DNA of 63,887 bases, counting the filler, from Octopus bimaculoides (taxonomy: Eukaryota), in the NCBI RefSeq assembly GCF_001194135.2. It is 5 parts of 5 records of this genome, joined end to end, with 100 filler letters (N's around TTAATTAATTAA, not from the genome) between each part and the next. Parts side by side here need not be neighbours in the genome. Positions count along the whole stretch, not along the records: positions 23,480 to 50,003 come from NC_068989.1; 4 more parts are not named here. The stretch is one strand, 5' to 3'. Numbering within the stretch: position 1 is the first letter of the stretch; each line of letters starts with the position of its first letter. The notes under the pieces are model-generated. The model was not told where the DNA came from. It did no database searches and was given only the letters and a program-made list of their open reading frames with translations. The position numbers were made by a program, and so were the translations under genes. Of this stretch, positions 11,605-49,219 are shown piece after piece.

Positions 11605-11681
<77 letters not shown>

Positions 11682-11699
11682 TCCACTCTCTCTGCCTTT

Positions 11700-17920: not shown

Positions 17921-18000
17921 CCATTCACATATATATCGATATATATGTGTGCGTGTGTGTATGTGTAGATGCATGTGCATGTTTATGTATTATTTATGTA

Positions 18001-27675: not shown

Positions 27676-28972
27676 GTTTCAGCTGCAAAGCTGCGGTCAT
27701 GCTAGAACACCACCGTTGACTGAGCTATACCATTGTTTGAAACCTCCTCTGATATGTAGCATTTAGTCAATGAGGGAGTTTCATGCTGCTACCTTCATGT
27801 TTGTTTTCTGGCGTGAGTTAGGCTCGTCTGGAACCCGTAATAGGAAGAGATCCAGTTTTGTTTTTAAGACACTTACATCCACACCATGCAGGTCTTTCAG
27901 GCATTTTGGAAGGACTTTAATGAGCTGTAGGCCCTTGAAGATCAAGCTGTTGCAGTATCTGGTCCTGTATTTTGATAGCGATGCTGGGATCTTTGGCATT
28001 ATGCCGTGGCACCCCGTTCTGCAGTTTGAGTAACTTTCAATCCAAAGTTTGGTACAAGGCCTTCTAGGATTTTCCAAATGTATATCATTGCATGTATCTC
28101 TCGCCTTCGTTCCAGGGAGAAGAGTTTTAATTCTTTCAGTCTTTCCCAATAGCTGATACGTTGCATCGAGATGATTTTTTTAGTATAGTTTCGTTGGATT
28201 GCTTCGAGTTCCGCCGTGGAATTTTTATTTTGTGGTGTCCATAATTTGGAGTAATAGTCTAAACGGCTGAGAACGTATGTCCTCCAAAGGATCATCAATG
28301 TCTCCTTTTCTCTTGTTTTGAAAGTTCGGAGGATCCAGCCAGGCAGCCGTCTGCATTTTGTTATCAAATTGGTAATATGCACTTGGAAAGATGCATCATT
28401 GCCCATGTCAATGCCCAGGTCACGCACTGATTTTGATTCATGGATTTCAATTCCTCCTGGGCCAGTATATCCTGTCTGCATGTCGTTTAGCTTTGTGTGC
28501 TGGTAGCGTAGAGCCCGGAATTTTTCTGCATTAAACTGCATGTTTTCGTCAGCCCACCTATATATTGCGTCTAACTCTCGTTGCAGATGTGCTATATTTC
28601 CAGGATTTTGTATTGTCTGGGAAACTTTTGTGTCATCTGCATAGCAATTGTGGCTATCTGAGCAGCCGAGGGCATCTCTGAGAGGGCCAATATGAACAGC
28701 AGTGGCCCCAAGACAGTGCCTTGTGGAACATTACTTGCTTTTTGTGTTTCCTTGGAGGTAGTTCCATTGGCCACTACTGCCTGACGTCTATCCTTTAGAA
28801 AGTTGTGCAGCCATTCTCCAAGTTTCCCGCATGTGCCGAGATCGCGCAATTTGTGACATGTCATACCATGGTCAACTTTATCAAAGGCTTTTGCAAAGTC
28901 GAGATATATCACATCCACGCTTGAGTCACTCAGCTGTTCCAACACCCAGTCGTAGTGTTGCAGGAGCCGCGT
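27676..28972 (-). mobile_element. 5'-truncated CR1-type LINE, RT C-terminus to 3' tail (same family as 1455-2495)
   Basis: QLLQHYDWVLEQL...YLDFAKAFDKVDHG...PQGTVLGPLLF...MQFNAEKF...RDLGI...LSRLDY..KLW...LEAIQR...SYWERLKELKLFSLERRRE; frameshifted. The tail GGTGGTGTTCTAGCATGACC...CTGAAAC lies at 27676-27714. Confidence 0.9.
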
Positions 28973-30680: not shown

Positions 30681-31699
30681 NNNNNNNNNNNNNNNNNNNN
30701 NNNNNNNNNNNNNNNNNNNNNNNNNNNNNNNNNNNNNNNNNNNNNNNNNNNNNNNNNNNNNNNNNNNNNNNNNNNNNNNNNNNNNNNNNNNNNNNNNNNN
30801 NNNNNNNNNNNNNNNNNNNNNNNNNNNNNNNNNNNNNNNNNNNNNNNNNNNNNNNNNNNNNNNNNNNNNNNNNNNNNNNNNNNNNNNNNNNNNNNNNNNN
30901 NNNNNNNNNNNNNNNNNNNNNNNNNNNNNNNNNNNNNNNNNNNNNNNNNNNNNNNNNNNNNNNNNNNNNNNNNNNNNNNNNNNNNNNNNNNNNNNAGCCT
31001 CGGGCCGACCAAAGCCTTGTGAGTGGATTTGGTAGACGGAAACTGAAAGAAGCCCATCGTATATATGTATATATATATGTATGTGTGTGTATATGTTTGT
31101 GTGTCTGTGTTTGGTCCCCCCCCCCCACATCGCTTGACAACCGATTCTGGTGTGTTTACGTCCCCGTAACTTAGCGGTTCGGCAAAAGAGACCGATAGAA
31201 CAAGTACTAGGCATCCAAAGAATAAGTCCTGGGATCGATTTGTTCGACTAAAGGTGGTGCTCCAGCATGGCCGCGGTCAAATGACTGAAACAAGGAAAAG
31301 AGTAAAAGAGTGTGTGTGAAGATCGGCTGCTAAACAGTTTCTGTCTCTCAAATTTACTCATAAAGCATTTGCTTGATCCGAGATCTACAGTAGAAAACAC
31401 ATACCCATAGTGCCGTGCGGTGAGACTGAGCTAGAAACCTCGTGGCTGCAAGACAAGCTTTTAACTATAGAGTCATGCTTGCGACTATGCTAGAATTTCA
31501 GTTTCTTCTTTATCTCTTTATCTGGATCACCGCCTTTAGTCGAGCAAATCGTCCTCAGGACTTATTCTTTGGAAGCCTAGTACTTATTCTTTCGGTCTCT
31601 TTTGCCGAACCGCTAAGTTACGGGGACGTAAACACACCACCATCGGTTGTCGAGTGATGTTGGGGGGACAGACACAGACACACAAACGTATACACACAC

Positions 31700-31730
<31 letters not shown>

Positions 31731-32639
31731 CGACGGGCTTCTTTCAGTTTTCGTCTACCAAATCCACTCACAAGGCTTTGGTCGGCCCGAGGCTATAGTA
31801 AAAGACACTTGTCCAAGGTACCGCGCAGTGGGAATGAACCCGGAACCATGTGGTTAGTAAGCAAGCTACTTACCACACACCCACTCCTGCGCCTATACAC
31901 ACGCACACAAATACATTATTTACATTTGACGGATATTTTTCCTCATCTTGTTTGTTGTTAACTCTTAAATATAGAACTGTCTTTCCCAGATACTTTCATT
32001 ATGTACTTTACTATATTAATTCTTAACAGATATTGTCTATATGTTATTCCATCGTTTGTTCATGCATACGATTCGGTTAAAGTTATTCTTGTCTTCGATA
32101 CGTCGAAGTGGGCAATTCCATATATATATATTTTTTTTAGCCTTTTATCCATTTTACACTGTTTATTGTGTAACATACAATTCAGGCATTATATCTAGAG
32201 CCTCGTACGAAATAAGTAAATATTGTAGTGTTGTGTATATTGTGCTACATGAAGTAAACACAGAAAGTTTTGTATAATGCACTGCTTTCTATGGAATTAA
32301 CATGACAGGCGTTGTTTAAATTACTTTGCGGAAATAAATAAAGCATTTTGATATACATAAGATGAGTTCAAATCCTACTGAGATGAACTTTGCCTTACAT
32401 ACATTCAACGTCGATGAAATAAAGTACCAGTTAAGTACTCGGTGATTGGTATCGACTTACCCCCTCTACTCAAAATGATTAATCTCTCGCCTGAATTAGA
32501 AGCCATTATATATTTTTCAGCAATTTATGTTAGTGATTCTTGGGGCCCTGTACTGCATATACTTTATACAGTACGATATTCTGTTTTTATATGTACGTAC
32601 AGTACACTATACCTATAAAAAAAAATACGTACCCTATGA

Positions 32640-32717: not shown

Positions 32718-34170
32718 GAGTAATTTCGAAATTTAGAAAAAGAGAAGAAACCTGTAAACAGAACATGTTTATCTAACAGCGACAGGTTGGTATTTTATAC
32801 TTATCAGGTCTCATTTAACTTTAACGTAGTCAAATAGTACATTCTCTCTGTAAGTATCGATAATCATTCATAATATGACGTTGTGCGGTAAATACACAGA
32901 CGTAGTTCCTTTTAATATCTGTTATGGAATCGTTATATGTTTAGGAATCATTTATAATATATTGGTTTCAAATTTTGGCACAAGGCCAGTAATTTCGGAT
33001 TACTAAGTCGAATACATTGACTCCCCCTCCCCCAGTGCTTAACTGCTACTTATTTTATAGACAGCAAAAGAATGAAAGGCAAAGGCAAAGGCAAAGTCAA
33101 TCCTGGCTGCATTCGAACTCAAAACGTAAAGACAGACGGATTGTCACTAAGAACTTTGCCCGGCGCGCTGATGAGTCTACCAGCTAGCCGCCTTACTCAG
33201 AGAAAGCCTAGCGACGTATGATTATGTTTCTTTACATTTGATTCCAAACGAGATGAACATTACATTTTCTCTCTGGAATTAAAGAAATAAATTATCATTC
33301 AAGCAATTATGCTCTACCTCAATATATTTGCTACTGTACTTCAGTTAGAATCCAATACGAACTACACGGATTGTTACACTCAGTGAAATCTTTATATTTT
33401 ATCATGGTAGAATGAGTTTCGAGAGAGAAATTTGGCTGCAAATTCTACGAGGACTCCTACGTAGGCTTATCTGGTTGGCTTGTGAACAAAGAACAATTTA
33501 ATATAAGTTTAATTAGCACAAAAGTAATTAGGTGTAGTAATGTAAAATATGAAACAGTCATATATATTAGATGTAACAGGTGGAATAAAATATCGATATC
33601 AACTCGACTATAATATTCAAAGAGCTGTCATATCTATTCATAAAACAAACATCTAGAATATTTAATAAAAGACATGGCTGTGTACTAAAAAGCTTGCTTC
33701 CTAACCACGTGGTTCCAAGTTGAGTCCCACTTGCGTAGCACCTTAGGCAAGTGCATTTTACTATAACATCGGGCCGAACAGCCTTGTGAGTGGATTTCAT
33801 AGATGGAACCTGAAAGAAGCTTGTCGTGTGTGTATATATNNNNNNNNNNGAGGAATATATTATTTTGTTTAAAAGAGTTCCAACACTGTCTGTTTTTTAT
33901 GTTTTATTTATATTCCTGCAGAACCAATGTGGGGTATAGAATATGGAATATACAATATATAACATAAAATAAAATAAAATAAAAATGGATGGCACCATGA
34001 AATAAAGTATTGAATGTAGATGAAATATTGAGTGTTCAATATAAAGGATCAAATATATAAATATAAATATAAATATATAAAGGCGACTTGAGTTTCAGGG
34101 CTATTTCCCTTCACCATGGCCGGTATGACAGACTTTATATATATATAAGAGATGAAAGTAGTAATTAAAG

Positions 34171-34654: not shown

Positions 34655-34844
34655 CCGTGTATGTGCGCATGTATGTGTATGTGTGCTTGCGTTTGTCCCC
34701 TACCATCGCTTGACAACCTGTGTCCGTGTGTTTACATCACCGTAGATGAGCAGTTCGGTAAAAGAGACCGATAGAATAAGTACCAGACTTAATAAGAAAA
34801 GGCAAAAAAATGAACTGGGCTCGATTCAGTCGTTAAAGCATTCT

Positions 34845-34890
<46 letters not shown>

Positions 34891-35807
34891 NNNNNNNNNN
34901 NNNNNNNNNNNNNNNNNNNNNNNNNNNNNNNNNNNNNNNNNNNNNNNNNNNNNNNNNNNNNNNNNNNNNNNNNNNNNNNNNNNNNNNNNNNNNNNNNNNN
35001 NNNNNNNNNNNNNNNNNNNNNNNNNNNNNNNNNNNNNNNNNNNNNNNNNNNNNNNNNNNNNNNNNNNNNNNNNNNNNNNNNNNNNNNNNNTATCTGTCTG
35101 TCTATCTGTCTGTCTGTCTGTCTGTCGTCTGTTTGTCTGTCTGTCTATCTCTCTCTCTGTCTATCTATGTGTGTGTGTGTCTGTCTATTTGTCTCTCTGT
35201 CTCAATATCTCTATATATATTTGTATGTATGTAAGTATGTATGTACGTACGTATGTATGTATGTATGTATGTATGTATGTATGTATGTATGTATGTATGT
35301 ACATCTATGTGTCTATCTTTATATTTATCCCGCACAAAACGTAACATACATATGAATTCATACATATCAGTATTTTCATTGAATCCGTCTGAAGTGTTTT
35401 ACTTTCCCCACACCTTCCAATTCCCTATCTCTCCCTTCTGTTACACGACTCCTCCTCTTCCTATTTTTTCTCCTCTTGTCTCTCTCTCTCTCTCTCTCTC
35501 ATGCGCACATACTCTCACACAAACACACACATACACACATATACAAAACAAACGAATAAACAAACGCACTCACATATACACTTAAAAACATCCTCATACA
35601 TCCGAACTTATATACATAATAACGGAAACTTATATTCGAGTGATGAATTTCCCTTAACGCCGGATGATGTAGGATCGACAAGATTTATATACGTTTGTGG
35701 CTGATTAATATATTTAGTGTATGTGTTAATATTAAAGCTGCCTGCATTCAGCTTGACTTCGTTCGAGACGAGATAGCTTAGGCGAGAGAGAGTCAGCGAC
35801 TACGAAA

Positions 35808-37727
35808 ATGCTGGTGCTCACGTACTTTCTAGTAGCACTTTTCACTTTGATTTTAGCCAAAGATAAATGTGGTCAACACGAATGTGCCGACCAAGCATTT
35901 AACCAAAGCTATCACTTTTACTTACAGGGTTGTTTCTGCGATACTCGCTGTGAGGTTTATGGCGACTGCTGTGTTAATTACAACTCAACAGACATATCAA
36001 CCAGCGATAAATATGGTGAATCTAATTGTGTCGCACTCGATGACGATCATGCGTTGATGATGGTAACGTCTTGTAGCAAAGAGTACTCGCCTGAGTCTGA
36101 AATAAGTCAAAACTGCTATACGGACACTGGCCATCCAGCTTGGGGCATTCCCGTAACAAGTATTGAATCCAAGATTGTCTACAAAAATATGTTTTGTGCT
36201 CTTTGTAACAGTGAAAATCACTATACGTTTTGGAACATACGCATAGAATGCCCAGAGGAAATTGACACTAGCAATCTTAGTAAAACTCTTGATGAAAATA
36301 TGGAAGGATGCAATACAAAAATGGAAAACTTAGAACCTTCTTACGAACATAAATGTAACAGCAGTATAATCTCCAGCTGTCCACAAGGAACAAAAGATGA
36401 ACAGACTGTGAAAGATTGCCGTAATGGTTACTACGGAGTTGTTTACGATCTTAACGGTACAATGTATAAAAATATTTTTTGTTTCAATTGCAATGTAAAT
36501 AAGTCGGAAGAAATACTTTGTCACTATGACACAGGACCTACGATAATCGAAATGGAAGCAAGATTATCGTTTTCAGTTCTGCTTAATTTCAATCGAGATG
36601 TTACTGTAAACAAGGCAGACCACCTGGTACGGATGAATCCTTGTAAAGAAGGGTACATATATACTAACGGAGAGTGTCGAAAGAAACTGCAAGTGGAAAA
36701 AAGCGGTCCGAAGTGTACGCAGGTAAAACTTAACAACCATGAATTTGTATTCTTAGCAAATGGAACACTTTACCATAATTCAACAAAGACATTTCACGGA
36801 AAAGAATATTATTCTATAAATGACACAAGCCGTATGGATGTGTATATATGCATGGATCGGATTTTAAACAAAGATGTACAACGAATACCTTTAACTACTT
36901 CTGAAACCGAAATCCAGCTCACATATGTGTGTTCTGTAATTTCAATGATTGCTTTAGCCATTCTTATTGCTAAATTTTTATATTTTCGTAATATTCGCTC
37001 ACTGTCCGGTTTCATATATGTTTCATTTGCCATCACTTTATTTATAGCGCAACTTCTCTTCGTCCTAACACCTCATTTTTCCAAGATGGTCATTTCATCC
37101 TGTCGTGCAGTAGCAGTGGTTATGCACTACGCGTTTCTGTCATCATTCTTCTGGTTAAATTCCATCACTATTAACATATGGCTATCTGTCTGCTGGACAC
37201 CATGTCAATCAAAAAAATATTCAGAAAAACGTTCTTTTATCTCCTATTCGGCCTTTTCATGGCTTGCACCCATACTCTTGATTGTACCTGCAATTCTACT
37301 CGATAAGTACCAACCGAATTCTATTTTCGCTCCCAGTTATGGGTTATATGAATTCTGCTGGATAAACAATGGGTCGAGTATTATGCTTTTCTTCGCAGGT
37401 CCGCTTGCTTTGATTATTCTCATAAATATGATACTTTACATACATACCGCTGTCACAATTTACAAACTCCGTAAATTTACTCAGCAACATTCGGACAGAA
37501 ACGATGTTGTAGCAATATTTATCAACATGAAACTTTGTTTATTGACTGGTATTACGTGGAGTATTGGATATGTTGCAATCGTAACACATTCTTACCACTT
37601 AAGAGTTGCTTTCATCTTTTTAAATTCATCTTTCGGACTTTGGGTTGCAATGTCTTTCTTGTTTACTCGAAGCATCTTCACCAAAATGAAACAGAAAATA
37701 AGAACATTAACTGAAACCGGAGAATAA
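35808..37727 (+). CDS. intronless class B-like (secretin/Methuselah-like) GPCR with somatomedin-B-like ectodomain, 639 aa
   Basis: Signal peptide MLVLTYFLVALFTLILA; SMB-like CFCDTRCEVYGDCCVNY; two YKNxFCxxCN repeats. Seven hydrophobic helices with class B signatures: HYAFLSSFFWLN (TM3), SWLAP (TM4), FCWI (ECL2), GP..IILIN (TM5), LTGITWSIG (TM6), FLNSSFGLW (TM7). No GPS motif. Confidence 0.93.
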   Translation: MLVLTYFLVALFTLILAKDKCGQHECADQAFNQSYHFYLQGCFCDTRCEVYGDCCVNYNSTDISTSDKYGESNCVALDDDHALMMVTSCSKEYSPESEISQNCYTDTGHPAWGIPVTSIESKIVYKNMFCALCNSENHYTFWNIRIECPEEIDTSNLSKTLDENMEGCNTKMENLEPSYEHKCNSSIISSCPQGTKDEQTVKDCRNGYYGVVYDLNGTMYKNIFCFNCNVNKSEEILCHYDTGPTIIEMEARLSFSVLLNFNRDVTVNKADHLVRMNPCKEGYIYTNGECRKKLQVEKSGPKCTQVKLNNHEFVFLANGTLYHNSTKTFHGKEYYSINDTSRMDVYICMDRILNKDVQRIPLTTSETEIQLTYVCSVISMIALAILIAKFLYFRNIRSLSGFIYVSFAITLFIAQLLFVLTPHFSKMVISSCRAVAVVMHYAFLSSFFWLNSITINIWLSVCWTPCQSKKYSEKRSFISYSAFSWLAPILLIVPAILLDKYQPNSIFAPSYGLYEFCWINNGSSIMLFFAGPLALIILINMILYIHTAVTIYKLRKFTQQHSDRNDVVAIFINMKLCLLTGITWSIGYVAIVTHSYHLRVAFIFLNSSFGLWVAMSFLFTRSIFTKMKQKIRTLTETGE

Positions 37728-37838
37728 ACCGATTCTTATAAACTCCGCATTTGTAAATATATCATTTTAGCTGATTGTATATTAAATTGTAAATATTTCT
37801 CCACGCATAAAAATGTCAAGATATTTCCATTATTATTA

Positions 37839-37881
<43 letters not shown>

Positions 37882-38021
37882 CATTTTATGTTTGACTTTT
37901 GTTTTGCATTTGTACAAGTTGGATCCAAGTCTCACCCAGAGACCTCAAGAGACAAGTTAGAAGTTCATGTAGGTGTTATGCCTAGGGTACCATATATTTG
38001 GATTTGTACAGTTTTGTTCAA

Positions 38022-38100
38022 GTGAATGTTTAAGAAACCATAAGAAAATTATGTGTTTGCTTTAAACACATAATTTTCTTATGGTTTCTTAAACATTCAC
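38022..38100. repeat. perfect 37-bp inverted repeat with 5-nt loop
   Basis: GTGAATGTTTAAGAAACCATAAGAAAATTATGTGTTT-GCTTT-AAACACATAATTTTCTTATGGTTTCTTAAACATTCAC. Confidence 0.95.
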
Positions 38101-38228
38101 CGGAATATTCCAACAGATGGCCATCCATGCTCGTCATCAAATAACCAAAAGAAAAAGAATGAAAAATGGTCTAGGGAAGATAATAAAGAAGTTCTTACAG
38201 CCTTCTACCATGCCATATATTCCCCATA

Positions 38229-38292
<64 letters not shown>

Positions 38293-38520
38293 TATCTCCG
38301 GATTTCTTCTAACCCCCGCAGACTTGCATGCGTAGCGGTCTTGCTGTCTGAAGCCTAAGGTACAAAGCTATCCGTTCTTTTCAACTTTCCTGGTAATTCT
38401 GGCCGTGCCAAGGCGGCAAAACTTTTGTAACAGTTCTACTGAGTACTCTACACCGATTTCCTTTATATTTCTCTTGGTGTCTTCTGATACTGTCCCCAAG
38501 GAACCAAGAATATAATTGGG
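38229..38520 (-). mobile_element. R4/Dong-like 3' fragment with (TAA)n tail
   Basis: ILGSLGTVSEDTKRNIKEIGVEYSVELLQKFCRLGTARITRKV*, followed on the minus strand by (TAA)n at 38229-38290. Confidence 0.8.
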
Positions 38521-39103
38521 ACCATTATCATCATCATCATCATAATTGAGCGAGAGAGCAGTGCATGCCATCAAAGTGACACTGGGTTACAAATATACGA
38601 AGCCCATTATACCCATCATGACTACCCGTCTGATAAGGGTACACCAGGCCCATGCATCACAAATATATGTGCGCTACATGGTGATCTTATATCTAAATAA
38701 ACACCTCAAGAACGTGTAGGCAGAGCTCTGTTAGAATTTTCTTGAGGTCGAGTGTCACAACCGGCTCCAAACGTCCCCGTGTAAGGGTTTTTAAAAGGAT
38801 ATTGAACGAAACACAGGTCTCAAGAGAGAAATCGTTCAAACACCAAAGAATTCCTCTCAACATATGATTATGATGCATTCCTCACTCCTCCTGCGCGTGG
38901 TGACAGATGCACATATCGTCAGCCACTAAGGGAAATGCTCAAATGGTTATGGTCAAACAGCTGGCACGAAGATCTGTGGAATTGAGCAGAGTATTTGCTG
39001 TAGCCCATCGTTTACATCAAGAGAAAGCTTATAACACTTTCAATCAGTTAAGATCAGAAGCTTGGTATTAGATCAGGGTAGTTATTATTATTATCGTTAT
39101 TAT

Positions 39104-39178
<75 letters not shown>

Positions 39179-39255
39179 CACCACCACCACTGTGGTCAAT
39201 CTAATAGACTCGGCCCTTTCCCAAAATTTCAGGCTTTGTGCCTTCAGGAGAAAGG

Positions 39256-39326
<71 letters not shown>

Positions 39327-39554
39327 GGCGACAATCTGGCTGAATCGTTTCGACGTTGGCCAAAATGTTTAGCGCTATTTCGTCCGTCTTTACGTTCTGA
39401 GTTCAAATTCCGCCGAGGTGGACTTTGCGTTTCATCCTATTGGCGTCGATAAATTAAGTACCAGTTAAATACTGGGGCCGATGTCGTCGAATAGTCCCCT
39501 CTCCCAATTTTCAGGCCTCGTGGCTGTACAGAAATTATTATTATNNNNNNNNNN

Positions 39555-39602
<48 letters not shown>

Positions 39603-39837
39603 ATTATTATTATTATTATTAAGGCGGCAATCTGGTACAATTGTTAGCACGCTGGGCAAAGGATGCTTAGCGGCATTTCGTTCGACTTTACATTCTGGTT
39701 TCAAATTCCGCGGAGGTCGACTTTGCCTTTCATTCATTTGGGGCTCGATATCATAAGTACCAGTTAAGTACTGGGTTTGTGCAACCGACTTTTCCTCTTT
39801 TCCGAAACTGCTGGCTTTGTGCCAAAATTTGAAACCA

Positions 39838-39852
39838 TTATTATTATTATTC

Positions 39853-39887
<35 letters not shown>

Positions 39888-40520
39888 TCCTTTTATCACA
39901 GGTTTTGCTGGAACTTCTGAAGAATTTCTCGCATAGCGAGCTTACTACCTACAAATTATGGTACCATGCTCTCTGTTCTTTTCAACTATTTAATACTTTC
40001 CTGATTATTCTGGCCGTGCTAAGGAGGCAAACCTTTGTAGCAGTTCTACTGGGTGTTCTATTCCGATTTCCTTTATATTCCTCTTGATGTCTTCTGATAC
40101 TGTCCCCAAGGATCCAACAATAATTGGCACTATCTTCACCTTCTTCATTTTCCATATCCGAGCTATTTCGTACTTAAGAGGGTTGTATTTATCTATTTTT
40201 TTTTTTGTTTTCCTTCTTGTCTATTCGTGGGTCAAAGGAGCACGCAACATCAACTATATAGCACAAGTGGCGACCACCACTAGGTCTGGTCTGTTATGCT
40301 CGAGCACCTGATCTGTTTGGATTGGGAAATCCAAAAAGATTTTTGCAGGTCTCCGACTCCGCCATTCTCTACTTTTCGCACCATTTCCAATGTAGCACCT
40401 TCACTACCTGATCGTATCGCCACAGCTTGTAGTGGTTTGGAGCGAGTCTAGGACATTCGTTTACGATATGGGCAATGATCCACTCTATTACAAATGCGGG
40501 AAGAGCTGAGACACTTACTT
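39838..40520 (-). mobile_element. R4/Dong-like RLE endonuclease fragment
   Basis: HIVNECP (zinc knuckle end), DQVVKVLHWK, HNRPDLVVV..YIVDVAC (PD-(D/E)xK), KYNPLKYEIARIW..KVKIVPIIVGSLG; flanked by (TAA)n. Confidence 0.85.
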
Positions 40521-41173
40521 ATGCGTTTCGCATCATGGAATTCTTAGTTACGGCTAGATTTTTTATGAACATGACTCTTCCGTACTACAGTGATTATCCT
40601 TCCAAGAATTTCCAATCTTACAAGTGAATTTTTAACGCAAAATAGAGAGTAGATGTAAGAATACTGTACGTTTAAATAACAAACGCTATACGGCGATTGA
40701 AGGGAGGTTATTATATCAGTTTTATTTCTATTATCTCCCTTGTGTTGTGTACGTATTTATATTTTTAGGAGCACACACAGCATCCTTAAACTCTTACAGA
40801 ATTTAAAGAAAAGTTGATAGGGGTACGCAAATCAAATGGCACTTGGGGTGATCATGATAGAAACTAGCTGAAAAGAAGAAGAAAAGACAAAGAAGGAGAA
40901 GAAGAAGAGGAAAAAGTGGAAGAAGGAGACTATGCCTAGTAAATTCACACACAATATCATTCATTTTTAGTAAATACCTAGAGTAATTTAGAATATTTTC
41001 TTGTACATACATGGTCTATATTGCAAACTCACTTTGCTGCTACGATGTTTCGGGTTCAATCCCGGCGTGCGGCATTTTGGACAAGTGTTTTCAACCATGA
41101 TCCCGGACTGACCAAATTCTTGTGTGGGAATTTCGTAGTTTCGTAGAAAGAAGCTGAGTGGAAACGCGTTGTC

Positions 41174-41204
<31 letters not shown>

Positions 41205-41813
41205 NNNNNNNNNNNNNNNNNNNNNNNNNNNNNNNNNNNNNNNNNNNNNNNNNNNNNNNNNNNNNNNNNNNNNNNNNNNNNNNNNNNNNNNNNNNNNNNN
41301 NNNNNNNNNNNNNNNNNNNNNNNNNNNNNNNNNNNNNNNNNNNNNNNNNNNNNNNNNNNNNNNNNNNNNNNNNNNNNNNNNNNNNNNNNNNNNNNNNNNN
41401 NNNNNNNNNNNNNNNNATATATATATATATGTATATATATACATATATATATATATAAGTATGTATGTATGCATGTATGTATTTGTATGTATGTATATAT
41501 TTGTATGTATTTGTGTGTGTGTACGTATAAAAATTATGACCCCCCACCTTCGGTCATGAAGAGCAGCTGCCTTGCACCTAGGAAGTTCCCGTCCAAGGTA
41601 TAAGTCCAGGCAAGATTGTTTAAGGAAGACAAGCAGTCGCCCATGCATTTATCCCAGCCTCCCCACTCCATGCAACTGATGTTATCCAAGGGGAAAGGCC
41701 GATACAGTTTGACTCCGGTGACGTCACAACTTATTTCTACGGATGAGTGAACTGGAACAACGTAAAATAAAGTGTCTTGCTCAATAGCACAACCCCCGCC
41801 CCCACACGCGCGC

Positions 41814-41854
<41 letters not shown>

Positions 41855-42656
41855 CATATATAACGAAAATATTTGACCTTCTCAGCCTAATTTATTCTAT
41901 TCAGTTGTCAAGATAATTCTGCATTCTAACATTTCTGATGCTGCATCTTTCGTGTATCTATTTAGTAAATATATCATCAAACCGCAAGTTTCATATAAAC
42001 AAAAATAAACGATAGTGTTATTCCTGTTCTGGCTTATCTCAGTGGAACTGACATGTAAGATAAACATGAAGTTGATATCGAAACTCCAGTGCATGTATTA
42101 ACAGATATAAGTCTTTTAAAAATGCTGAGAACATAAGATGTTCAACAAAGAATGCGTTGTGAGTGTAAAACATGTGCAGTGAGTAGACAGGATTGTTGGA
42201 AAACTAGTAAATATGTAGGCGCTAGCGGGATTAAATGTTTTATTATCATTATTTCGAAAACATAAGGTTACTGGTTCAATATCCTTTCGGAGTACCTTGA
42301 GAAAATGCTTTTCATTCTATAGCTTAGGGTTAAAGAACACGGTGTGAATGAAAAAAAAGAAGAAATGCGAGTTAGCTATATGGAAAGTTTGGGTGTGGTG
42401 CATCTGTAAAGCAAAGGCGAACATTTTACAAATTAAGTGCGTCACACTGATTAAATCTGGAGATATTAAGTATACAATTGCATCAGTCTATAGGCGCAGT
42501 CGTAGCTTTATGGTAAGAAGCTTCTTCCTAACCAACCACATGGTTCCGAGTTCAGTTCCACAGTGTGGCACTTCGGGTAAGTGTCTTATACTATAGCCTC
42601 AGGCCGACCAAATCCTTGTGAGTAGATTTCGTAGACAGAAACTGAAAGAAGTCTGT

Positions 42657-42687
<31 letters not shown>

Positions 42688-42845
42688 TTCTCTTTTTTCC
42701 TCCTTTTCTTCCTTCCTCGTCCAACGTACTGTCTCGTAGCGTTGCATTTTCCAACGGTATTTTCAAATAAGCTATGTAGCATGCTTCTCTACTCGCAGTT
42801 GTCACATTCGGTAATAATGTCTTACGGTTGAGTTGATTTTTTAAG

Positions 42846-42937
42846 TATTTCCCTGAAGAGAAGATTATATCTTTCTCAACATCACTCATTCCTTTGGAAT
42901 GAACCAATTGTAATCTTCGAAACATATGTCGGAAATA
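42846..42937 (+). ncRNA. type I hammerhead ribozyme (Penelope-like pLTR type)
   Basis: Helix I TATTTCC/GGAAATA (7 bp); core CTGAAGA 42853-42859; helix II GAAGATTATA/TGTAATCTTC (10 bp, one GU); GAAA 42919-42922; palindromic helix III ACATATGT; GUC triplet ending at 42930. Confidence 0.85.
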
Positions 42938-43267
42938 AAAGAAATCATTTAACACATGCGTATAACTCCATTTATTTAACCTTATATTTATTCAAAATAC
43001 CTCAAATTAACGGAGTTTCTACCTCATAAACAGGAGTTACACCAAAGTTATTTTGTATATATATAATATATATCACCATTACCTTTATTACCATACGTTT
43101 ATCGTATATACATATATATATATATAAATATGTATGTATATAATTATTTGTGCGTCTGTGTTTGTTCCTACACCATCGCTTGACAACCGATGCTGGTGTG
43201 TCTACTTCACCCGTAACTTAGCGCTCATCAAAGGACTCCGATAGAATAAGTACACTGCTTTTAAAGA

Positions 43268-43318
<51 letters not shown>

Positions 43319-45771
43319 TGAGTATGCCTTTGTGTCTATGTTTGTCCCCCCACCATCACATAACAACCAACATTGGTGTGTTTACGTCTCCGTAACATAG
43401 CAGTTCGGCAAAAGAGCCGATGGAATAAGTACTAGGCTTACAAAGAATGAGTCCTGAAAGCCCTTTTAAGGCGGTACTCCAGCATGTCTGCAGTCAAATG
43501 ATTATAATGTATAAACGTAAAAGAGTATGCGGGAGGAGCAATGTAGCTATACATCTGTTTATATAAAGTTTGAGAGGGGACGAAAAAAGTGAGAGGAATT
43601 CTTGGATGCCTTATTTACTTAATTGTTTGTTCTTTTGTGATGAACTTCTACAAAGCTGCTTGAGTGGTTGTAAGAAAGCATATGAAATATATTTTAGTGT
43701 TAATGGAGTTACGTCCCTTGACAATGTATTGCCTCTAAATTTACTCTATGGAGTTATGTCCCTTCTACAGTTACGGTTACAAACTCGCACAACACCCTTA
43801 ACATTAATTATTTCATTTTTCATTTTTCATTTTATCTAGTTTCAGCTCATGAGCTGTGGCCATGCTGGGGCACCGCCATTTTATTATTTTTTTTTTGCAG
43901 GATATACAAAGTAAGTACCATTGGTGAACTGGAATCGATTTAATCGATTATCTAGTATGGTGTTGTCGAAGTATTCGGTACAGGTCCGATAATGCATTCG
44001 GCCCATATTTGATGATAACTTTTTTTTTTTTTCTTAAATATATGTTTTACCTGTGAATTTAAGTGTATAAACTGGGAATATATACAACGAGTTTCTCTGC
44101 CCTAGGTTTACGGAAAACACTCGGCGAGAAATGGAAGAAAATTTGAAGAAAGAAGAAAAAAAACAACAACAACATAATAATAATAATAATAATAATCCTT
44201 TGTACTATAGGAACAAGGCCTCAAATTTGGTTGGAGGGGACTAGTCGGTTACATCGACCCCAGTGTTTCACTGGTACTTTACTTATTTTGTTGACCCCGA
44301 AAGGATGAAAGATAAAGTCGACCTCGGCGGAATTTGAACTCAGAACATAACGGCAGACGAAATACCGCTAAGCATTTTGCCCGGTGTGCTACGATTCTGC
44401 CAGCTCACCGCCTTCAATAATAACAATAATAATGATTTTATCTATTTGCCACAAGGACGAAGAAGGAGGGGGACTGACATAGAGTGCGGGGGTTTACATT
44501 TAATGAAATGATTAAAAGAAAGATACTTAATGACTAACATACATGAAATTCTTGAGTTTAGCGTGCAAAAAGTTTTATTAATGCTCACATCATGGATTTA
44601 TTAACTTAGTATTAAACGCCATGGTTTTAATTAACATGTAATAGTAGAACTGGCATCATGTTTTAAATACGTAAGCAATGAGAAAAATAAAAAGAGAGAA
44701 ACAATAGTGGCTTGTACACCAACGGTGTATGAAGAGTGCATAGTACTACCCGCCTCCCCTGCCCCCTGCCCCCTCCACTCACACAAAACACAAATGTACA
44801 ACTACACACAAAATATACAGAAACTCTAAGAGAAACGGCCATGCATATGTTTTCAAGCACAGTTTATAAACATACATACATACATGGGTCTTTGTGATAT
44901 GGAAAGATAACTCATCTGGCAAAGCAGCTTAGACTCCGCCACATGTCTAAATCCAAGAACTGAACTTTTCGGATCATGTCCACATGAGGCTAAATATTTG
45001 TTACGTTTTTGGTTTCCCCAAGATTACAGATAGGGCTTGCTTTCTATATTGCGTCCACGTGCAAGCTTTTTATCTCTCTATACTTTTTACTTATATTTCT
45101 TATATATTTTTGTATTTTCTTACGTATTTATAGAGATATTGTTTTATAGTTTTATTGCTCATATATTTTTTACACATATTTTTTTTGTATTCTATCTTTC
45201 ACCCTGCATTTTTCCTGTGCGTATATAGACGTGTATATGGAATCTTTGTGCGCGCGTGTGGATGTATGCGTGTGTGTGGGCATGTGCGTATATAGACGTG
45301 TGTGTATGCGTGCATGCGAGTATGTGCGTATATAGATGTGTTTTACTCTTATTGCTTATTTTTTTACACTTTTTTCTGTATTTTGCCTTTAGCCCTGTTT
45401 TTTCTTGTGCATGTGCGTATATAGACGTGTGTATGAACAGTTTTTGTGCGCGTGCGTGCGTGTGTGTGTGCGAGCGTGTATGCGGACATGTATATATTTT
45501 TTGGCGAATGTGTGGGTGAGTATGTGTGTGTTTCAAGTGAGGGGGGAAGAGTATATACATATAGGCACATGTACATGTGTGTGCGGGCGCTCATGTGTAG
45601 GTATGGACATACGCGCTTACGCGATTACTATGAGCATCTTTATTCCTTTACCTTTACTCCCTCCCCTAACTTAGCAGTCATTCTAATAGCCCTTTTATCT
45701 TAATAACGGTCAACCACAAAGTAATTCCCTTTGTTTAACGGTCATTTTCAGAGCATTTTTTTCGATGGTCC

Positions 45772-45832
45772 GATAACTGAAGAGATGCCGTCGAGGGCGT
45801 CCGCCTCGACATCCGAAACTCGGAGTTTTATC
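45772..45832 (+). ncRNA. type I hammerhead ribozyme candidate (GC-rich family)
   Basis: Helix I GATAA/TTATC; core CTGAAGA 45777-45783; helix II GTCGAGG/CCTCGAC with an irregular base; GAAA 45815-45818; helix III ACT-CGG-AGT; GUU triplet. Confidence 0.65.
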
Positions 45833-46872
45833 ATGGCTACCGAATAATTGTCGCATATTATATTTACAGATATATATGTATATATATATATGCTGATGTT
45901 TGGAACAACGTGAAGAAGAATGACGAAAGCACGAGGGGAAAGGAACACATGTTGCGGCAAGCGGAGTCGTCTCGGCAATGGACAGCCTGGCCGGTCCAGG
46001 TGTTCCGGGTAATATCCTATGTATATTGTGAAAAAGTATCATTTTGGCTTTAATTTTTGTCTGGAAGACTTCGGTTGGTTAACGAACGAAAGCGCTGATT
46101 AAAGAATTCTAACTCGTTCCAAAATTCCGACAGCCTCTTTTTCTCAATATACAATATCTGTACACCAATTTAAACACTGTATACATACATACATACACAC
46201 ATACATACATACATACATACACAGACTTATACATATAAATAATTATATACACGTAAATACCTCTGTGTGCGCGTGTCGAAGTATGTATATGTATGTGTAA
46301 ATATTTTTTTATATATGTATGTATATATATATATATATATATATNNNNNNNNNNTGAGAATTCAGAAATAGCAGTCAAAGAACTACTGATTTCAAAACTA
46401 CAAATTATTACTCCAGATTGATAGCGATATTTTTGTCAATCCCTATATATTTATGATTATAAATGTTTTTTTACCGAAAAGGTTTTTTCATACTGAGCTA
46501 CCCGGCAAAATTGTTAATTATTAATTTTATTACTAATTGACGATTCCCTGCCCTGCATATCTATCTATCTATCTATATATATATATATATAATTATATGT
46601 CTATATGTATATCGTATATATATATATGTGTGTGTGTGTGTGTTTATATGCATACTTACATACATACATGCATACATATATATATATAAATAAATATATG
46701 TATATATATATATATAATATGTATATATATATATATATCTATCACATCACACCACACCAATACCCTCGCATCACACCACGCACACACTACAACTGACCAA
46801 CCACTTTCTCCCTTTCTCCCTTCCCCATTTTCACACTACACACGCAAACATACACTCACCCACACATATATA

Positions 46873-47105
46873 CATTGCTGGTCAAAAGTCACCGGACAGT
46901 AAATCGCAAGCATTTAATTCCGAGATTCATTTATGCTTAATTTCTGAATGAATTTAATAAAAGCATCTAAATGTGAAACGTCATGAAAATTGTTGAAACC
47001 GAAGTCCATCTCTGTTGACATATTTTCCCATTCGAGTGAATACAGTATTACAGATAATATTTATGGAATTTCGATTTACTGTCGGTTGACTTTCGGTCAA
47101 CATAT
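46873..47105. mobile_element. Tc1-like MITE
   Basis: TA-CATTGCTGGTCAAAAGTCACCGGACAGTAAATCG ... CGATTTACTGTCGGTTGACTTTCGGTCAACATAT-TA; 25/32 identity between the TIRs. Confidence 0.7.
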
Positions 47106-47107
47106 TA

Positions 47108-47197
<90 letters not shown>

Positions 47198-47371
47198 TAT
47201 ATATATATATATGTACATATATATATATATATATAAATGTATCAGTTTATATGTATGATACTTTTGTGCGTATATTTTGGTTTATTCAAACAAACTTTGT
47301 AACAGTAACTTTAATAGAATACTTTGTATTCCGTAAACTGATTGCTTACATGTCTGTTTATATATTTTACA

Positions 47372-49219
47372 TTAACTTGCAGATGCAGTTACAGATCTGA
47401 TTTTTTCTTTGGCCAGATTAGCTACAGTTTCCGTGCAAAGAAAGCAGCATGCAACCCATAATCCGAAAGTTGCATTTAAAAGCACGTAGAGTGTCCGAAG
47501 AAATTGTACATCTGATGTGATTGAAATGTAACCAAAAATCCACATAGCTCCAGTGAGGCAACATAATTTCACGTTTATAATGATTGTGAACATAGTTTGC
47601 TTTTTAGGCTGTGCCTTCATGACAGATCGAGCTCTACAAATTTCGGAAGCCGTGCGTATATAAACAATTATATTGATGACAATTATCACTGCCATCGGAA
47701 TGTCGAAAAAGATTAAAATACTCAGTGGCGTACTCATCCAGCAAAAAGTACCTCGCCCGTATTGAGGTGCGAACTTAGATGTCGGATCGTACCTGTCCAG
47801 TAATAATGCAGGCATTATGATGAGTAAAGGTGTAAACCAAGCGTAAAGAGAGCATAGCAAAAATGTCCTATTCTTGTTCAAGAGCATTACATGATGAGCA
47901 GTTCTGTGGCAAATTGATATATAAACACTAATACTTATGACATTCATCCAGAAAAAGGATGCCAAAAAGGAATATTGTATACATACAGCAACCCAATAAC
48001 AGAAACCTGGAAATTCTCCAATTAGTAATACAATAAGGAAACATATATCTGCGATAAATAGTGACAATGCAAATGAAGCGTTAATTCGACCCGATAAATT
48101 TCGGAGTGGCGGCAAAACAAGGTACATGATGAAGTACACAGCTAAAGCTATAACGGATATCATAGTTCCAGTCAATGATATATAGAATTCAGATTTCGTA
48201 AGAATGATAGTTCCTCCATATCCAGGACTATCTAACACGCGTTCTTGGCAAATATAAACACGACTGTTATTTATAATATAGAAATCCTGACTGTGAAAAC
48301 TTTCAGTAGCGTTGTGGAAAAGGGTTTGGTTTTCTAAAAGAAAATACTCGGTAGAATTTAGTTCGATTAATGTTGTACAGTTTAGACGATCGTTTCTGGT
48401 AATGCGATTAGCATCGTACGACTTACGGCACTTACCTAAATAATGATCAAAAACAGAATTTTCAGGACAAAGTTTACCACTTTTTCCCATATTTGTATCC
48501 CAAAAGTTTTCGTCATTAAAGTCGATAAGTATCCTGAATGATATAGTAAATTTGTAGCCTGTAGGATGATGTTTACTTCGAATGGTTGGTATTGTATATA
48601 TAGTAGAAGAATTGCAGCACAGGTTTTCATAAAATAGATCACGAGAACTTTCATTTAAAGCATTTTCCTTATTATTATTGCAACAGCAATCAATAGTTTT
48701 CGGACAACGACTGTTATGAAAAGGAAAAGGTGGATGTCTAAATGACCACTCACATTTACTTGAATCAAATGTGATATTCGGATATTTGATATAATTTAAA
48801 CACTCCACGCTGTTTATTTTCAAATTCCAGAATATAAAATCATCCTCGTTATTGCATAAAGCGCAGTATTTATTTCGATAGACTTTCCCTGTTTTACGAC
48901 TGGTTACATAAACATTAAATAACGAGGAGTTGCTTTGAGATTCACACTTTTCTCTAATTGTTTTATCGTCCACATATTCTTCACTGCAAATCTTTATAGA
49001 GTTTAGTTTATCGAAATTTGAATAGTAACGATCGTACATTTCTGATAGGTCTCGACTGTTATTAGCATTGTTGAAGTCACTACAGACACAGGTTTTATTT
49101 TCATTCAATTCACATTTAACATCCGAACATGATAATACGTTTGCTTCGGGTATCATTACCAGATGGCTAGGATATGTATTGATAAATAGTAGCAGATAGT
49201 AAAATCCAAACAAATTCAT
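47372..49219 (-). CDS. intronless class B-like (secretin/Methuselah-like) GPCR, paralog of 35808-37727, 615 aa
   Basis: Signal peptide; Cys-rich ectodomain with VYRNKYCALCN, SFRILIDFN and CPENSVFDHYLGKCRK. 7TM with QYSFLASFFWMN, AWFTP, FCWM, LTGAMWIFG and LLNATFGLW. Colinear with the other receptor. Confidence 0.93.
   Translation of the reverse strand: MNLFGFYYLLLFINTYPSHLVMIPEANVLSCSDVKCELNENKTCVCSDFNNANNSRDLSEMYDRYYSNFDKLNSIKICSEEYVDDKTIREKCESQSNSSLFNVYVTSRKTGKVYRNKYCALCNNEDDFIFWNLKINSVECLNYIKYPNITFDSSKCEWSFRHPPFPFHNSRCPKTIDCCCNNNKENALNESSRDLFYENLCCNSSTIYTIPTIRSKHHPTGYKFTISFRILIDFNDENFWDTNMGKSGKLCPENSVFDHYLGKCRKSYDANRITRNDRLNCTTLIELNSTEYFLLENQTLFHNATESFHSQDFYIINNSRVYICQERVLDSPGYGGTIILTKSEFYISLTGTMISVIALAVYFIMYLVLPPLRNLSGRINASFALSLFIADICFLIVLLIGEFPGFCYWVAVCIQYSFLASFFWMNVISISVYISICHRTAHHVMLLNKNRTFLLCSLYAWFTPLLIIMPALLLDRYDPTSKFAPQYGRGTFCWMSTPLSILIFFDIPMAVIIVINIIVYIRTASEICRARSVMKAQPKKQTMFTIIINVKLCCLTGAMWIFGYISITSDVQFLRTLYVLLNATFGLWVACCFLCTETVANLAKEKIRSVTASAS

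What the first reader, a model, noticed from the sequence alone, without database searches (positions are those of the whole stretch)
35808..49219. Convergent pair of intronless SMB/Methuselah-like GPCR paralogs in TE-dense DNA
Two single-exon receptors of 639 and 615 aa share ectodomain blocks (PVTS/YVTS..VY.N..CALCN; SF.(V/I)L..FN; C..G/N..(Y/F)...G.CRK; L...E(F/Y)..L.N.TL(Y/F)HN.T..FH...(Y/F)Y.IN....VYIC) and the 7TM, but are highly diverged. They lie tail-to-tail 9644 bp apart. The intronless structure suggests retroposition followed by an inverted duplication. Both ORFs stay open amid decayed TEs, which implies selection. They may belong to a lineage-expanded orphan receptor family with a sensory or developmental role (inference).
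Basis: partly seen in the sequence, partly recalled or inferred. Interest (0 to 1): 0.75.

Follow-up and report, generated by a model that had tools for sequence, protein, structure and literature searches.

The report
Paired Methuselah-like receptor genes in octopus
Two real neighbouring single-exon genes in Octopus bimaculoides encode orphan class B (Methuselah-like) cell-surface receptors; they are already annotated, belong to a large animal-wide family, and are ordinary apart from one copy having lost part of its ligand-binding head.

Summary
ORF A (35808-37727, +, 639 aa) and ORF B (47372-49219, -, 615 aa) are intact, lie tail-to-tail 9644 bp apart, and are 33% identical (E=3e-92). All N gaps are in the spacer, not in the ORFs.

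The window is Octopus bimaculoides chromosome CM046609.1. Both proteins have a signal peptide, a Cys-rich ectodomain (Pfam DUF8401) and a class B 7TM domain. They lack GAIN/GPS, hormone-receptor and Methuselah_N domains. A has a divergent somatomedin-B-like knot. B has lost it.

The family is large and found in many phyla. NCBI names the orthologs "Mth-like 3". Published work already describes octopus Methuselah-like expansions and somatomedin-B domains in Methuselah-like receptors.

The convergent pair is conserved in O. sinensis (18.2 kb apart) and Argonauta hians (5.8 kb), so the duplication is old. dN/dS is 0.46 overall, 0.22 in the 7TM and 0.65-0.83 in the ectodomain.

A single coding exon is typical of this family (Limulus, Adineta, Argonauta; one short intron in Liolophura and Owenia). 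It is therefore not evidence of a recent retrocopy.

Verdict: real, selected, already-annotated orphan receptor genes of low novelty. Ligand and expression remain unknown.

The parts
35808..37727 (+). Gene A: complete single-exon CDS of 639 aa. It is an orphan class B (Methuselah-like) GPCR of the SMB-like + DUF8401 + 7tm_2 family.
   Evidence: ORF. Exact protein found on O. bimaculoides CM046609.1 at 76,537,635-76,539,554 with precomputed DUF8401 + 7tm_2. Orthologs are 87% identical in O. sinensis, 83% in a third Octopus species and 61% in Argonauta.
35808..35858 (+). Gene A signal peptide (about residues 1-17, MLVLTYFLVALFTLILA).
   Evidence: Hydrophobic N-terminus read from the sequence. 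It forms a helix at residues 2-17 in the AF2 model. The cleavage site is inferred.
35865..35987 (+). Gene A divergent somatomedin-B-like cysteine knot (residues 20-60; CxxxxC...CFCDxxCxxYGDCC).
   Evidence: Pfam Somatomedin_B 17.5 bits, E=0.005, below the 23.1 cut-off. The same match occurs in 15/19 family members, best 3e-5. The family profile's best PDB hit is vitronectin SMB, E=0.056. The model has low pLDDT here.
36021..36857 (+). Gene A DUF8401 ectodomain core (residues ~72-350). It holds two homologous Cys-rich modules (residues 86-150 and 181-242, each ending Y-K-N-x-x-C-x-x-C-N), followed by a beta-rich membrane-proximal part.
   Evidence: Conserved 24-Cys framework. The two modules align with hhalign probability 97.8%, E=8e-13. 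The ectodomain AF2 model has pLDDT 71. Foldseek finds no significant PDB match; the top hit is the Methuselah ectodomain 1FJR at E=1.3.
36903..37724 (+). Gene A seven-transmembrane domain plus helix 8 and a short tail (residues 366-639).
   Evidence: Pfam 7tm_2 at residues 371-611, E=1e-24. The model shows seven long helices plus H8. The closest solved structures are adhesion-GPCR 7TMs ADGRL2, ADGRD1 and ADGRE1. The TM3-ECL2 Cys pair C432/C517 is invariant.
37728..47371 (.). Spacer between the two stop codons. It contains microsatellites, short interspersed repeats and three assembly gaps. No gene was recognised.
   Evidence: Gap flanks. Repeat copies at 39325-39525, 39621-39842, 44193-44414, 41047-41202, 42505-42673 and 43149-43496 are shared with unlinked locus L003. 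Its ORFs of 70 aa or more are low-complexity or have no recognisable coding content. No tRNA or Rfam match. No extra paralog fragment.
47372..49219 (-). Gene B: complete single-exon CDS of 615 aa. It is a paralog of A with a remodelled ectodomain: SMB-like knot lost, second Cys module degenerate.
   Evidence: ORF. Called as a 615-aa DUF8401 + 7tm_2 gene next to A on the public contig. Orthologs are 83% identical in O. sinensis, 79% in a third Octopus species and 52% in Argonauta, where it is an intact 612-aa ORF. The B clade lacks 6 of the 24 family cysteines.
47465..48184 (-). Gene B 7tm_2 domain (residues 346-585).
   Evidence: Pfam 7tm_2 E=5.3e-18. dN/dS in the 7TM is 0.22.

Best explanation
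Shown: these are two old paralogous genes of Octopus bimaculoides. Each encodes, from one coding exon, an orphan class B G-protein-coupled receptor of the Methuselah-like branch. The architecture is a signal peptide, a disulphide-rich ectodomain (divergent somatomedin-B-like knot plus Pfam DUF8401, itself an internal duplication of a Cys module), seven transmembrane helices and a short tail. There is no GAIN/GPS autoproteolysis module and no hormone-receptor domain. The two genes have stayed tail-to-tail neighbours since before Octopus and Argonauta diverged. Both remain under purifying selection, strong on the 7TM and weak on the ectodomain. Copy B lost half of the SMB-like knot and one Cys pair of the second module early, and has kept that derived form.

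Inferred: the ectodomain binds an unknown extracellular ligand, and the signal passes through the class B 7TM core to a heterotrimeric G protein, without a tethered-agonist step. The two copies have probably diverged in ligand specificity. The tail-to-tail arrangement itself is probably inherited rather than functional.
For: - Identity and architecture.
- Organism and public annotation. O. sinensis XP_029642078 and XP_029641985 are both named 'probable G-protein coupled receptor Mth-like 3'. Argonauta has GAB1603460. B exists in full length in NCBI and UniRef.
- Family size and breadth: the profile search found 3796 proteins at E<=1e-30, and the top 150 are all full-length matches at E<1e-130. 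Named members come from Strigamia, Limulus, Capitella, Owenia, Paralvinella, rotifers, Liolophura, Pinctada, Plakobranchus and the crinoid Anneissia.
- Age of the pair: it is convergent in O. sinensis (B-ortholog + strand 78,144,552-78,146,393; A-ortholog - strand 78,164,616-78,166,532). It is also convergent in Argonauta (A 10001-11929 +; B 17697-19535 -).
- Selection: NG86 dN/dS is 0.455 for A and 0.465 for B, 0.22 in the 7TM of both, and 0.83 and 0.65 in the ectodomains. Binomial tests against neutrality give p=2e-5 and 9e-6 for the whole genes. Only the coding regions align with Argonauta.
- Single exon as a family trait. Group-4 gene spans of 1.7-2.1 kb in the published table agree.
- Literature: an octopus Methuselah-like expansion with cd15039 7TM signatures (PMC6408891). 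Somatomedin_B domains in non-arthropod Mth/Mthl homologs, and the Mth ectodomain being arthropod-only (PMC4768249).
Against: - I found no expression data for A or B. Neither appears in the parts of the published expression table that I read. B's 2015 model was truncated to 472 aa.
- The ectodomain dN/dS of A (0.83) does not differ significantly from 1 (p=0.26). Constraint on that half rests on conserved cysteines and open frames, not on the rate ratio.
- Placement in the Methuselah 7TM branch was not tested directly, because no CDD cd15039 model or Drosophila sequences were on hand. It rests on database names and on a sister paralog's published signature.
- G-protein coupling and ligand binding are inferred from family membership only.
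- The A/B/C clade has replaced otherwise conserved 7TM residues: the TM7 Gln of N-S-L-Q-G, and the TM3 Asp of F-D-I-W. This might alter signalling.
Confidence: 0.85

Rival explanations
1. A multi-exon receptor gene was retroposed in the octopus lineage, giving an intronless copy, which was then duplicated in inverted orientation to give A and B.
For: Both CDSs are uninterrupted. The two genes are adjacent and inverted relative to each other.
Against: - Single-exon or nearly single-exon structure is shared by family members in Limulus, Adineta, Argonauta, Liolophura and Owenia, and by octopus paralogs C and P0069. Any retroposition would therefore predate the protostome radiation and says nothing about this pair.
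- No multi-exon parent was found.
- The pair predates the Argonauta/Octopus split, and dS between A and B is saturated.
- A groups with C, 4.5 Mb away, rather than with B (72% bootstrap). The history is more than one inverted duplication.
- No poly(A) remnant or target-site duplication could be expected to survive, and none was seen.
Confidence: 0.05
2. They are adhesion GPCRs. They would act by GAIN-domain autoproteolysis and a tethered (Stachel) agonist, since the nearest solved 7TM structures are adhesion receptors.
For: The best PDB sequence and fold matches for the 7TM are ADGRL2, ADGRE1, ADGRL4 and ADGRD1.
Against: - No GPS (PF01825) or GAIN match appears in any of 19 family members, even at E<=10.
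- There is no HL|T/S cleavage motif before TM1 (sequence).
- The ectodomain model has no significant PDB fold match, and GAIN domains are not among the listed hits.
- No Methuselah-type 7TM structure came up in these PDB searches; the only Methuselah entry met was the ectodomain 1FJR. Adhesion receptors may therefore simply be the nearest solved relatives.
Confidence: 0.03
3. One or both genes are unexpressed relics, open by chance or only recently inactivated.
For: I found no expression data for A or B. The ectodomain dN/dS of A is near 1. The surrounding DNA is repeat-rich.
Against: - Frames of 615-642 codons are intact in four species, including Argonauta, for both genes.
- The 7TM dN/dS is 0.22, with p<1e-6 against neutrality.
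- Flanking DNA is unalignable with Argonauta while the CDSs align.
- 18 to 24 framework cysteines are conserved.
Confidence: 0.04

Closest known systems
Octopus 'group 4' Methuselah-like GPCR expansion (Ritschard et al. 2019, PMC6408891)
   Same: Same species and same protein family. Group-4 member A0A0L8H6B0 (P0069) is a DUF8401 + 7tm_2 protein on the same chromosome, encoded by one exon (2016-bp span for 671 aa). Genes lie in local clusters of mixed orientation, and purifying selection is reported.
   Different: A and B are only about 26-28% identical to P0069. They fall in a separate small clade (A, B, C and an unidentified Logan group) that is sister to group 4 with weak support (66%). Paralog C (A0A0L8HT24) is listed there as non-expanded, group 0. 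A and B were not found in the parts of the published table that I read.
Drosophila Methuselah / Methuselah-like receptors (class B3)
   Same: Class B 7TM without GAIN/GPS, a Cys-rich ectodomain and a short C-tail. NCBI names the orthologs Mth-like 3. The top, non-significant fold hit of the ectodomain is the Mth ectodomain 1FJR.
   Different: No Methuselah_N (PF06652) match. The ectodomain is SMB-like + DUF8401 with 24 cysteines rather than the 10-Cys Mth ectodomain described in PMC4768249. From my own knowledge, not checked here, the Drosophila genes have several introns.
Somatomedin_B-bearing Mth/Mthl homologs of Nematostella, Branchiostoma and Saccoglossus (de Mendoza et al. 2016, PMC4768249)
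   Same: An N-terminal somatomedin-B domain on a Methuselah-type 7TM receptor outside arthropods. This matches A and 15 of the 19 aligned family members.
   Different: Those authors treated the SMB domains as separate acquisitions. Here the SMB-like knot is a constant part of a phylum-spanning architecture. I did not compare their three sequences directly.
Adhesion GPCRs (ADGRL, ADGRE, ADGRD)
   Same: Closest solved 7TM structures: sequence E=2e-16, Foldseek E~1e-9, TM-score about 0.75-0.8 on the target.
   Different: No GAIN/GPS, no adhesion-type repeats and no cleavage motif.
Pfam DUF8401 (PF28443)
   Same: Precomputed hits cover the ectodomains of A, B and all relatives.
   Different: It is a domain of unknown function. 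No paper in the library mentions it, and the model was not in the local Pfam copy, so I could not score it myself.

Membership tests
Class B (family 2) GPCR | 7tm_2 profile match above the curated cut-off | tested here: met
   A scores 87.6 bits and B 65.6 bits against a cut-off of 20.6.
Class B (family 2) GPCR | Seven membrane helices with the conserved TM3-ECL2 cysteine pair | tested here: met
   The AF2 model has seven long helices plus helix 8. C432 and C517 are invariant in 19 sequences.
SMB-like + DUF8401 + 7tm_2 receptor family | DUF8401 (PF28443) ectodomain match | tested here: met
   The precomputed Pfam hit is listed for A, B and all orthologs. The model is absent from the local library, so this was not re-scored.
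SMB-like + DUF8401 + 7tm_2 receptor family | Conserved framework of 24 ectodomain cysteines | tested here: met
   A and C have 24/24. The B clade has 18/24; the losses are C48, C54, C55, C74, C228 and C238 in A numbering.
Somatomedin B domain | Pfam PF01033 match above the cut-off, with the eight-Cys knot | tested here: inconclusive
   A scores 17.5 bits, below 23.1, but has all eight family Cys positions. 15/19 relatives match, and Anneissia scores 31.1 bits. B gives no match and has lost 4 of the 8 Cys, so the feature is not met for B.
Methuselah/Mthl family (defined by the 7TM) | 7TM groups with Mth/Mthl (CDD cd15039, or phylogeny with Drosophila Mthl) | not testable with these tools
   No CDD model or Drosophila sequences were on hand. 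Indirect evidence: NCBI names, a JGI name for P0029, and cd15039 hits published for other group-4 genes on P0069's scaffold (A0A0L8H6C3, A0A0L8H6V6) and stated in the paper's text for nearly all group-4 sequences.
Methuselah ectodomain | Methuselah_N (PF06652) match or fold | tested here: not met
   No hit in 19 members at E<=10. Foldseek's top hit is 1FJR, but at E=1.3, probability 0.51 and TM-score 0.23.
Adhesion GPCR | GAIN domain with a GPS cleavage motif before TM1 | tested here: not met
   No PF01825 or GAIN hit at E<=10. There is no HL|T/S motif in the 40 residues before TM1.
Secretin-like (B1) receptor | N-terminal hormone receptor domain (HRM, PF02793) | tested here: not met
   No hit at E<=10 in any member.
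Processed retrogene | An intron-bearing parent gene, with the copy as the intronless exception in its family | tested here: not met
   The relatives checked are themselves single-exon (Limulus, Adineta, Argonauta, C, P0069) or have one short intron (Liolophura, Owenia).
Processed retrogene | Poly(A) remnant and target-site duplications at the flanks | not testable with these tools
   The pair is older than the Octopus/Argonauta split, and the flanks are microsatellite-rich and unalignable with Argonauta. Such marks would have decayed.

The most novel reading that the evidence does not exclude
A and B may form a functional unit that has been kept together as tail-to-tail neighbours across octopods. 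A would be the full receptor. B lacks the SMB knot and has an altered second Cys module. It may act as a partner or modulator (heteromer or decoy), or may have acquired a new ligand, in a cephalopod-specific clade whose 7TM has also replaced the conserved TM7 Gln and TM3 Asp.

A family-level corollary is also not excluded. DUF8401 may be the ancestral ectodomain of the whole Methuselah family, with the insect Mth ectodomain as its diverged remnant.
Probability: 0.1. Interest if true: 0.5.

Novelty: already known. Interest (0 to 1): 0.2.

Why it matters
Little changes for the field. The genes are annotated, the family is in Pfam (as a DUF), and octopus Methuselah-like receptor expansions are published.

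The useful residue is modest:
- The pair and its paralog C form a small, old octopod subclade next to the expanded group. At least B, whose 2015 model was truncated, was not in the published census (its accession is absent from the supplementary files); A was not found in the table parts read.
- The single-exon structure is a family-wide trait across phyla and should not be read as recent retroposition.
- The DUF8401 ectodomain is an internal duplication of a Cys module behind an SMB-like knot. That gives a starting point for structural and ligand work on an orphan family that is absent from vertebrates.

Tried and rejected
- Logan contigs carrying the 83% and 79% orthologs looked like possible transcripts, because five runs gave the same ends. 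They are bounded by microsatellites and are colinear with the genome, so they are genomic and give no expression evidence and no UTR-intron test.
- I read parts 3-6 of Table S2 of PMC6408891 looking for A and B. I found only paralog C (A0A0L8HT24) and the group-4 member P0069. There was no class B row with a 1920-bp span and no A0A0L8HW34. The last few rows of that sheet (part 7) were not read.
- The third protein search, with a 25-sequence profile, did not widen the candidate set. It gave no named squid ortholog and no protein carrying both DUF8401 and Methuselah_N. The identity of the P0043 Logan group, and hence the timing relative to squids, stays open.
- Fold search of the ectodomain found nothing significant. 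The Methuselah ectodomain came first, but at E=1.3.
- Pfam and PDB searches of a LINE-like ORF (27999-28541, -) and of other ORFs in the piece found nothing. The tRNA and Rfam scans were empty.
- Literature searches for DUF8401, and for Methuselah-like combined with somatomedin B, found nothing.

Full report
**Observation.** In the piece 23480-50003 the ORF list gives exactly the two frames described. Gene A is 35808..37727 (+), 639 aa. Gene B is 47372..49219 (-), 615 aa. They converge, with 9644 bp between the stop codons. BLASTP of A against B gives 33% identity over 565 residues, E=3e-92, running from the mid-ectodomain to the C-terminus.

**Gaps.** The piece has seven runs of N. All abut microsatellites and none touches an ORF. 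The three within the finding's range are in the spacer, the nearest being 1.0 kb from B's stop. The reading frames are therefore not affected. The 9644 bp includes 232 N of estimated length. Blocks on either side of the first two gaps are colinear with the O. sinensis ortholog region. A tblastn search of four family proteins against the piece found no further copy or fragment.

**Source.** The exact A protein lies on Octopus bimaculoides chromosome CM046609.1 (GCA_001194135.2) at about 76.54 Mb. The 615-aa gene is called next to it on the opposite strand. B's full sequence is already in NCBI, UniRef and EukProt. An older UniProt model (A0A0L8HW34) was truncated to 472 aa.

**What the proteins are.**
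- Both pass Pfam 7tm_2 (E=1e-24 and 5e-18).
- Both carry a precomputed hit to Pfam DUF8401 over the ectodomain.
- The AF2 model of A (pLDDT 69) shows a signal-peptide helix, a mixed ectodomain, seven long helices and helix 8.
- The nearest solved structures, by sequence and by fold, are adhesion-GPCR 7TM cores, followed by secretin-family receptors.
- Across 19 family members scanned at E<=10 there is no GPS/GAIN, HRM or Methuselah_N match.
- An ectodomain-only model (pLDDT 71) has no significant PDB fold match. The first hit is the Methuselah ectodomain 1FJR, at E=1.3.
- At the N-terminus, A has a sub-threshold Somatomedin_B match (17.5 bits against 23.1). The same match recurs in 15 of 19 relatives (best 3e-5; the crinoid protein scores 31 bits). 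The family profile's best PDB hit is vitronectin SMB at E=0.056.
- The ectodomain has 24 conserved cysteines.
- It contains two homologous modules, A residues 86-150 and 181-242, each ending Y-K-N-x-x-C-x-x-C-N. hhalign gives 97.8% probability and E=8e-13.

**Family.** A profile search over 1.84 billion representatives found 16195 proteins at E<=1e-3 and 3796 at E<=1e-30. The best 150 all match over ectodomain plus 7TM at E<1e-130. Named members come from centipede, horseshoe crab, annelids, rotifers, chiton, bivalve, sea slug and crinoid. NCBI names the O. sinensis and Argonauta orthologs 'probable G-protein coupled receptor Mth-like 3'.

**Literature.**
- de Mendoza et al. 2016 (PMC4768249) showed that the Methuselah family is defined by its 7TM and that the Methuselah ectodomain is arthropod-only. 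They also found Somatomedin_B domains on homologs in Nematostella, Branchiostoma and Saccoglossus.
- Ritschard et al. 2019 (PMC6408891) described an octopus-specific Methuselah-like expansion, their group 4. [quoted passage not shown]
- The family member P0069 (A0A0L8H6B0) is in that group and has a 2016-bp span for 671 aa, so it is single-exon.
- Ten group-4 genes have spans of 1.7-2.1 kb.

**Relationships.**
- A third O. bimaculoides paralog, C (P0005 = A0A0L8HT24 = XP_014769632, 651 aa, 39% identical to A), is a single exon 4.56 Mb away on the same chromosome.
- The published table lists C as non-expanded. Its expression is mostly in the subesophageal brain (0.38), supraesophageal brain (0.22) and axial nerve cord (0.14).
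- A neighbour-joining tree (627 columns, 200 bootstraps) gives ((A,C) 72%, B) 84%. An unidentified Logan group joins them at 100%, and this clade is sister to group 4 at 66%.
- A and B were not found in the parts of the published table that I read.

**Age and selection.**
- In O. sinensis the B ortholog (+ strand) and the A ortholog (- strand) converge 18.2 kb apart.
- In Argonauta hians the A ortholog (+) and an intact 612-aa B ortholog (-), 52% identical to B, converge 5.8 kb apart.
- A third Octopus species has both genes intact.
- The duplication and the arrangement therefore predate the Octopus/Argonauta split. From memory that split is of the order of 100 million years old; I did not check this.
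- Nei-Gojobori dN/dS against O. sinensis is 0.455 for A (dS 0.146) and 0.465 for B (dS 0.188). It is 0.22 in both 7TM halves, and 0.83 (A) and 0.65 (B) in the ectodomains.
- Binomial tests against neutrality give p=2e-5 and 9e-6 for the whole genes, and below 1e-6 for the 7TMs. The ectodomains give p=0.26 (A) and 0.036 (B).
- Against Argonauta only the two coding regions align. The flanks do not.
- The B clade, Argonauta included, has lost 6 of the 24 framework cysteines. Four belong to the SMB-like knot and two to the second module. Six losses are enough for three whole disulphides, which would fit remodelling rather than decay, but the pairings were not determined.

**Introns.** The CDS is contiguous in Limulus (2538 bp for 845 aa), Adineta (2160 bp for 719 aa), Argonauta, and octopus C and P0069. 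Liolophura has one intron of about 198 bp. Owenia has one of about 262 bp, at a different place. Intronlessness is therefore the family's normal state and cannot date or explain this pair. Whether either gene has a 5'-UTR intron is unknown.

**Mechanism.**
- Shown: the architecture, the conservation and the absence of a GAIN/GPS module.
- Inferred from family membership: the Cys-rich ectodomain binds an extracellular ligand, and the class B core transmits the signal to a G protein without a tethered-agonist step. The fast-evolving ectodomains and B's remodelled head suggest divergence in ligand specificity.
- Caveat: the A/B/C clade has replaced the TM7 Gln of the N-S-L-Q-G motif (with F or Y) and the TM3 Asp of F-D-I-W. 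The consequences are unknown.

**Verdict.** It is wrong on retroposition and only half right on SMB. The genes are already annotated and belong to a described family, so novelty and interest are low.

Noticed in passing
window 36063-36257 and 36348-36533 (A residues 86-150 and 181-242): The DUF8401 ectodomain contains an internal duplication. Two Cys-rich modules, each ending Y-K-N-x-x-C-x-x-C-N, align with hhalign probability 97.8% and E=8e-13 across 16 family members.
   Followed up: partly
window 48500-49130 (-); B residues ~30-215: B and its orthologs in O. sinensis and a third Octopus species lack 6 of the family's 24 conserved ectodomain cysteines; the Argonauta B ORF, read by eye, lacks at least the SMB-knot cysteines. 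Four are from the SMB-like knot (YGDCC has become YDRYY) and two from the second module. B has also gained new Cys clusters (IDCCCNN, NLCCNSS).
   Followed up: partly
window 37100-37190 and 37610-37650 (A TM3 and TM7); same positions in B: The A/B/C clade and the unidentified P0043 Logan group replace otherwise conserved 7TM residues. TM7 N-S-L-Q-G-x-F-I has become N-S-S-F-G-L-W-V. The TM3 Asp of F-D-I-W is N or S. TM6 I-M-G is L-T-G.
   Followed up: no
window 25786-26224, 32959-33194, 39325-39842, 44193-44414; and 31001-31896, 33635-33833, 34658-34786, 41047-41202, 42505-42673, 43149-43496: Two families of short (150-350 bp) interspersed repeats have several copies in the piece, in an unlinked locus 4.5 Mb away, and in O. 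sinensis. They have no tRNA or Rfam match.
   Followed up: partly
window 27781-28541 (-): Two overlapping ORFs (180 and 122 aa) look, from memory, like the C-terminal region of a non-LTR retrotransposon ORF2. No Pfam or PDB match was obtained.
   Followed up: partly
window 27408-27530, 30681-30995, 33840-33849, 34891-35090, 39545-39554, 41205-41416, 46345-46354: All seven assembly gaps in the piece abut microsatellites ((AT)n, (TATC)n, (ATT)n, (GT)n). They mark unresolved simple repeats.
   Followed up: yes
L007 (Owenia) 10001-12521; L014 (Limulus) 2001-4538: Family members in Owenia and Limulus lie inside the called span of a larger gene. In Owenia this is a RhoGEF/WD40/LRRK2-like gene on the opposite strand. 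In Limulus it is a GOST_TM gene on the same strand. They look like genes nested in introns.
   Followed up: no
P0013 (Anneissia japonica, 1070 aa): This crinoid protein combines SMB + DUF8401 + a partial 7tm_2 (residues 695-785) with a full rhodopsin-type 7tm_1 (residues 785-1031). It is probably a fused gene model of two adjacent receptors.
   Followed up: no
P0043 and its cluster members P0171-P0180 (Logan contigs of about 2.1-3.0 kb): This group of 628-742-aa proteins is about 38% identical to A and C and 36% to B. It is sister to the A/B/C clade at 100% bootstrap. The species is unknown: it could be a squid or cuttlefish ortholog or a fourth octopod paralog.
   Followed up: partly
public annotation of gene B (window 47372-49219): The 2015 UniProt model A0A0L8HW34 is a 472-aa truncation with no 7tm_2 hit on record. 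This may explain why B is missing from the published octopus GPCR census. Gene A was also not found in the table parts read.
   Followed up: partly
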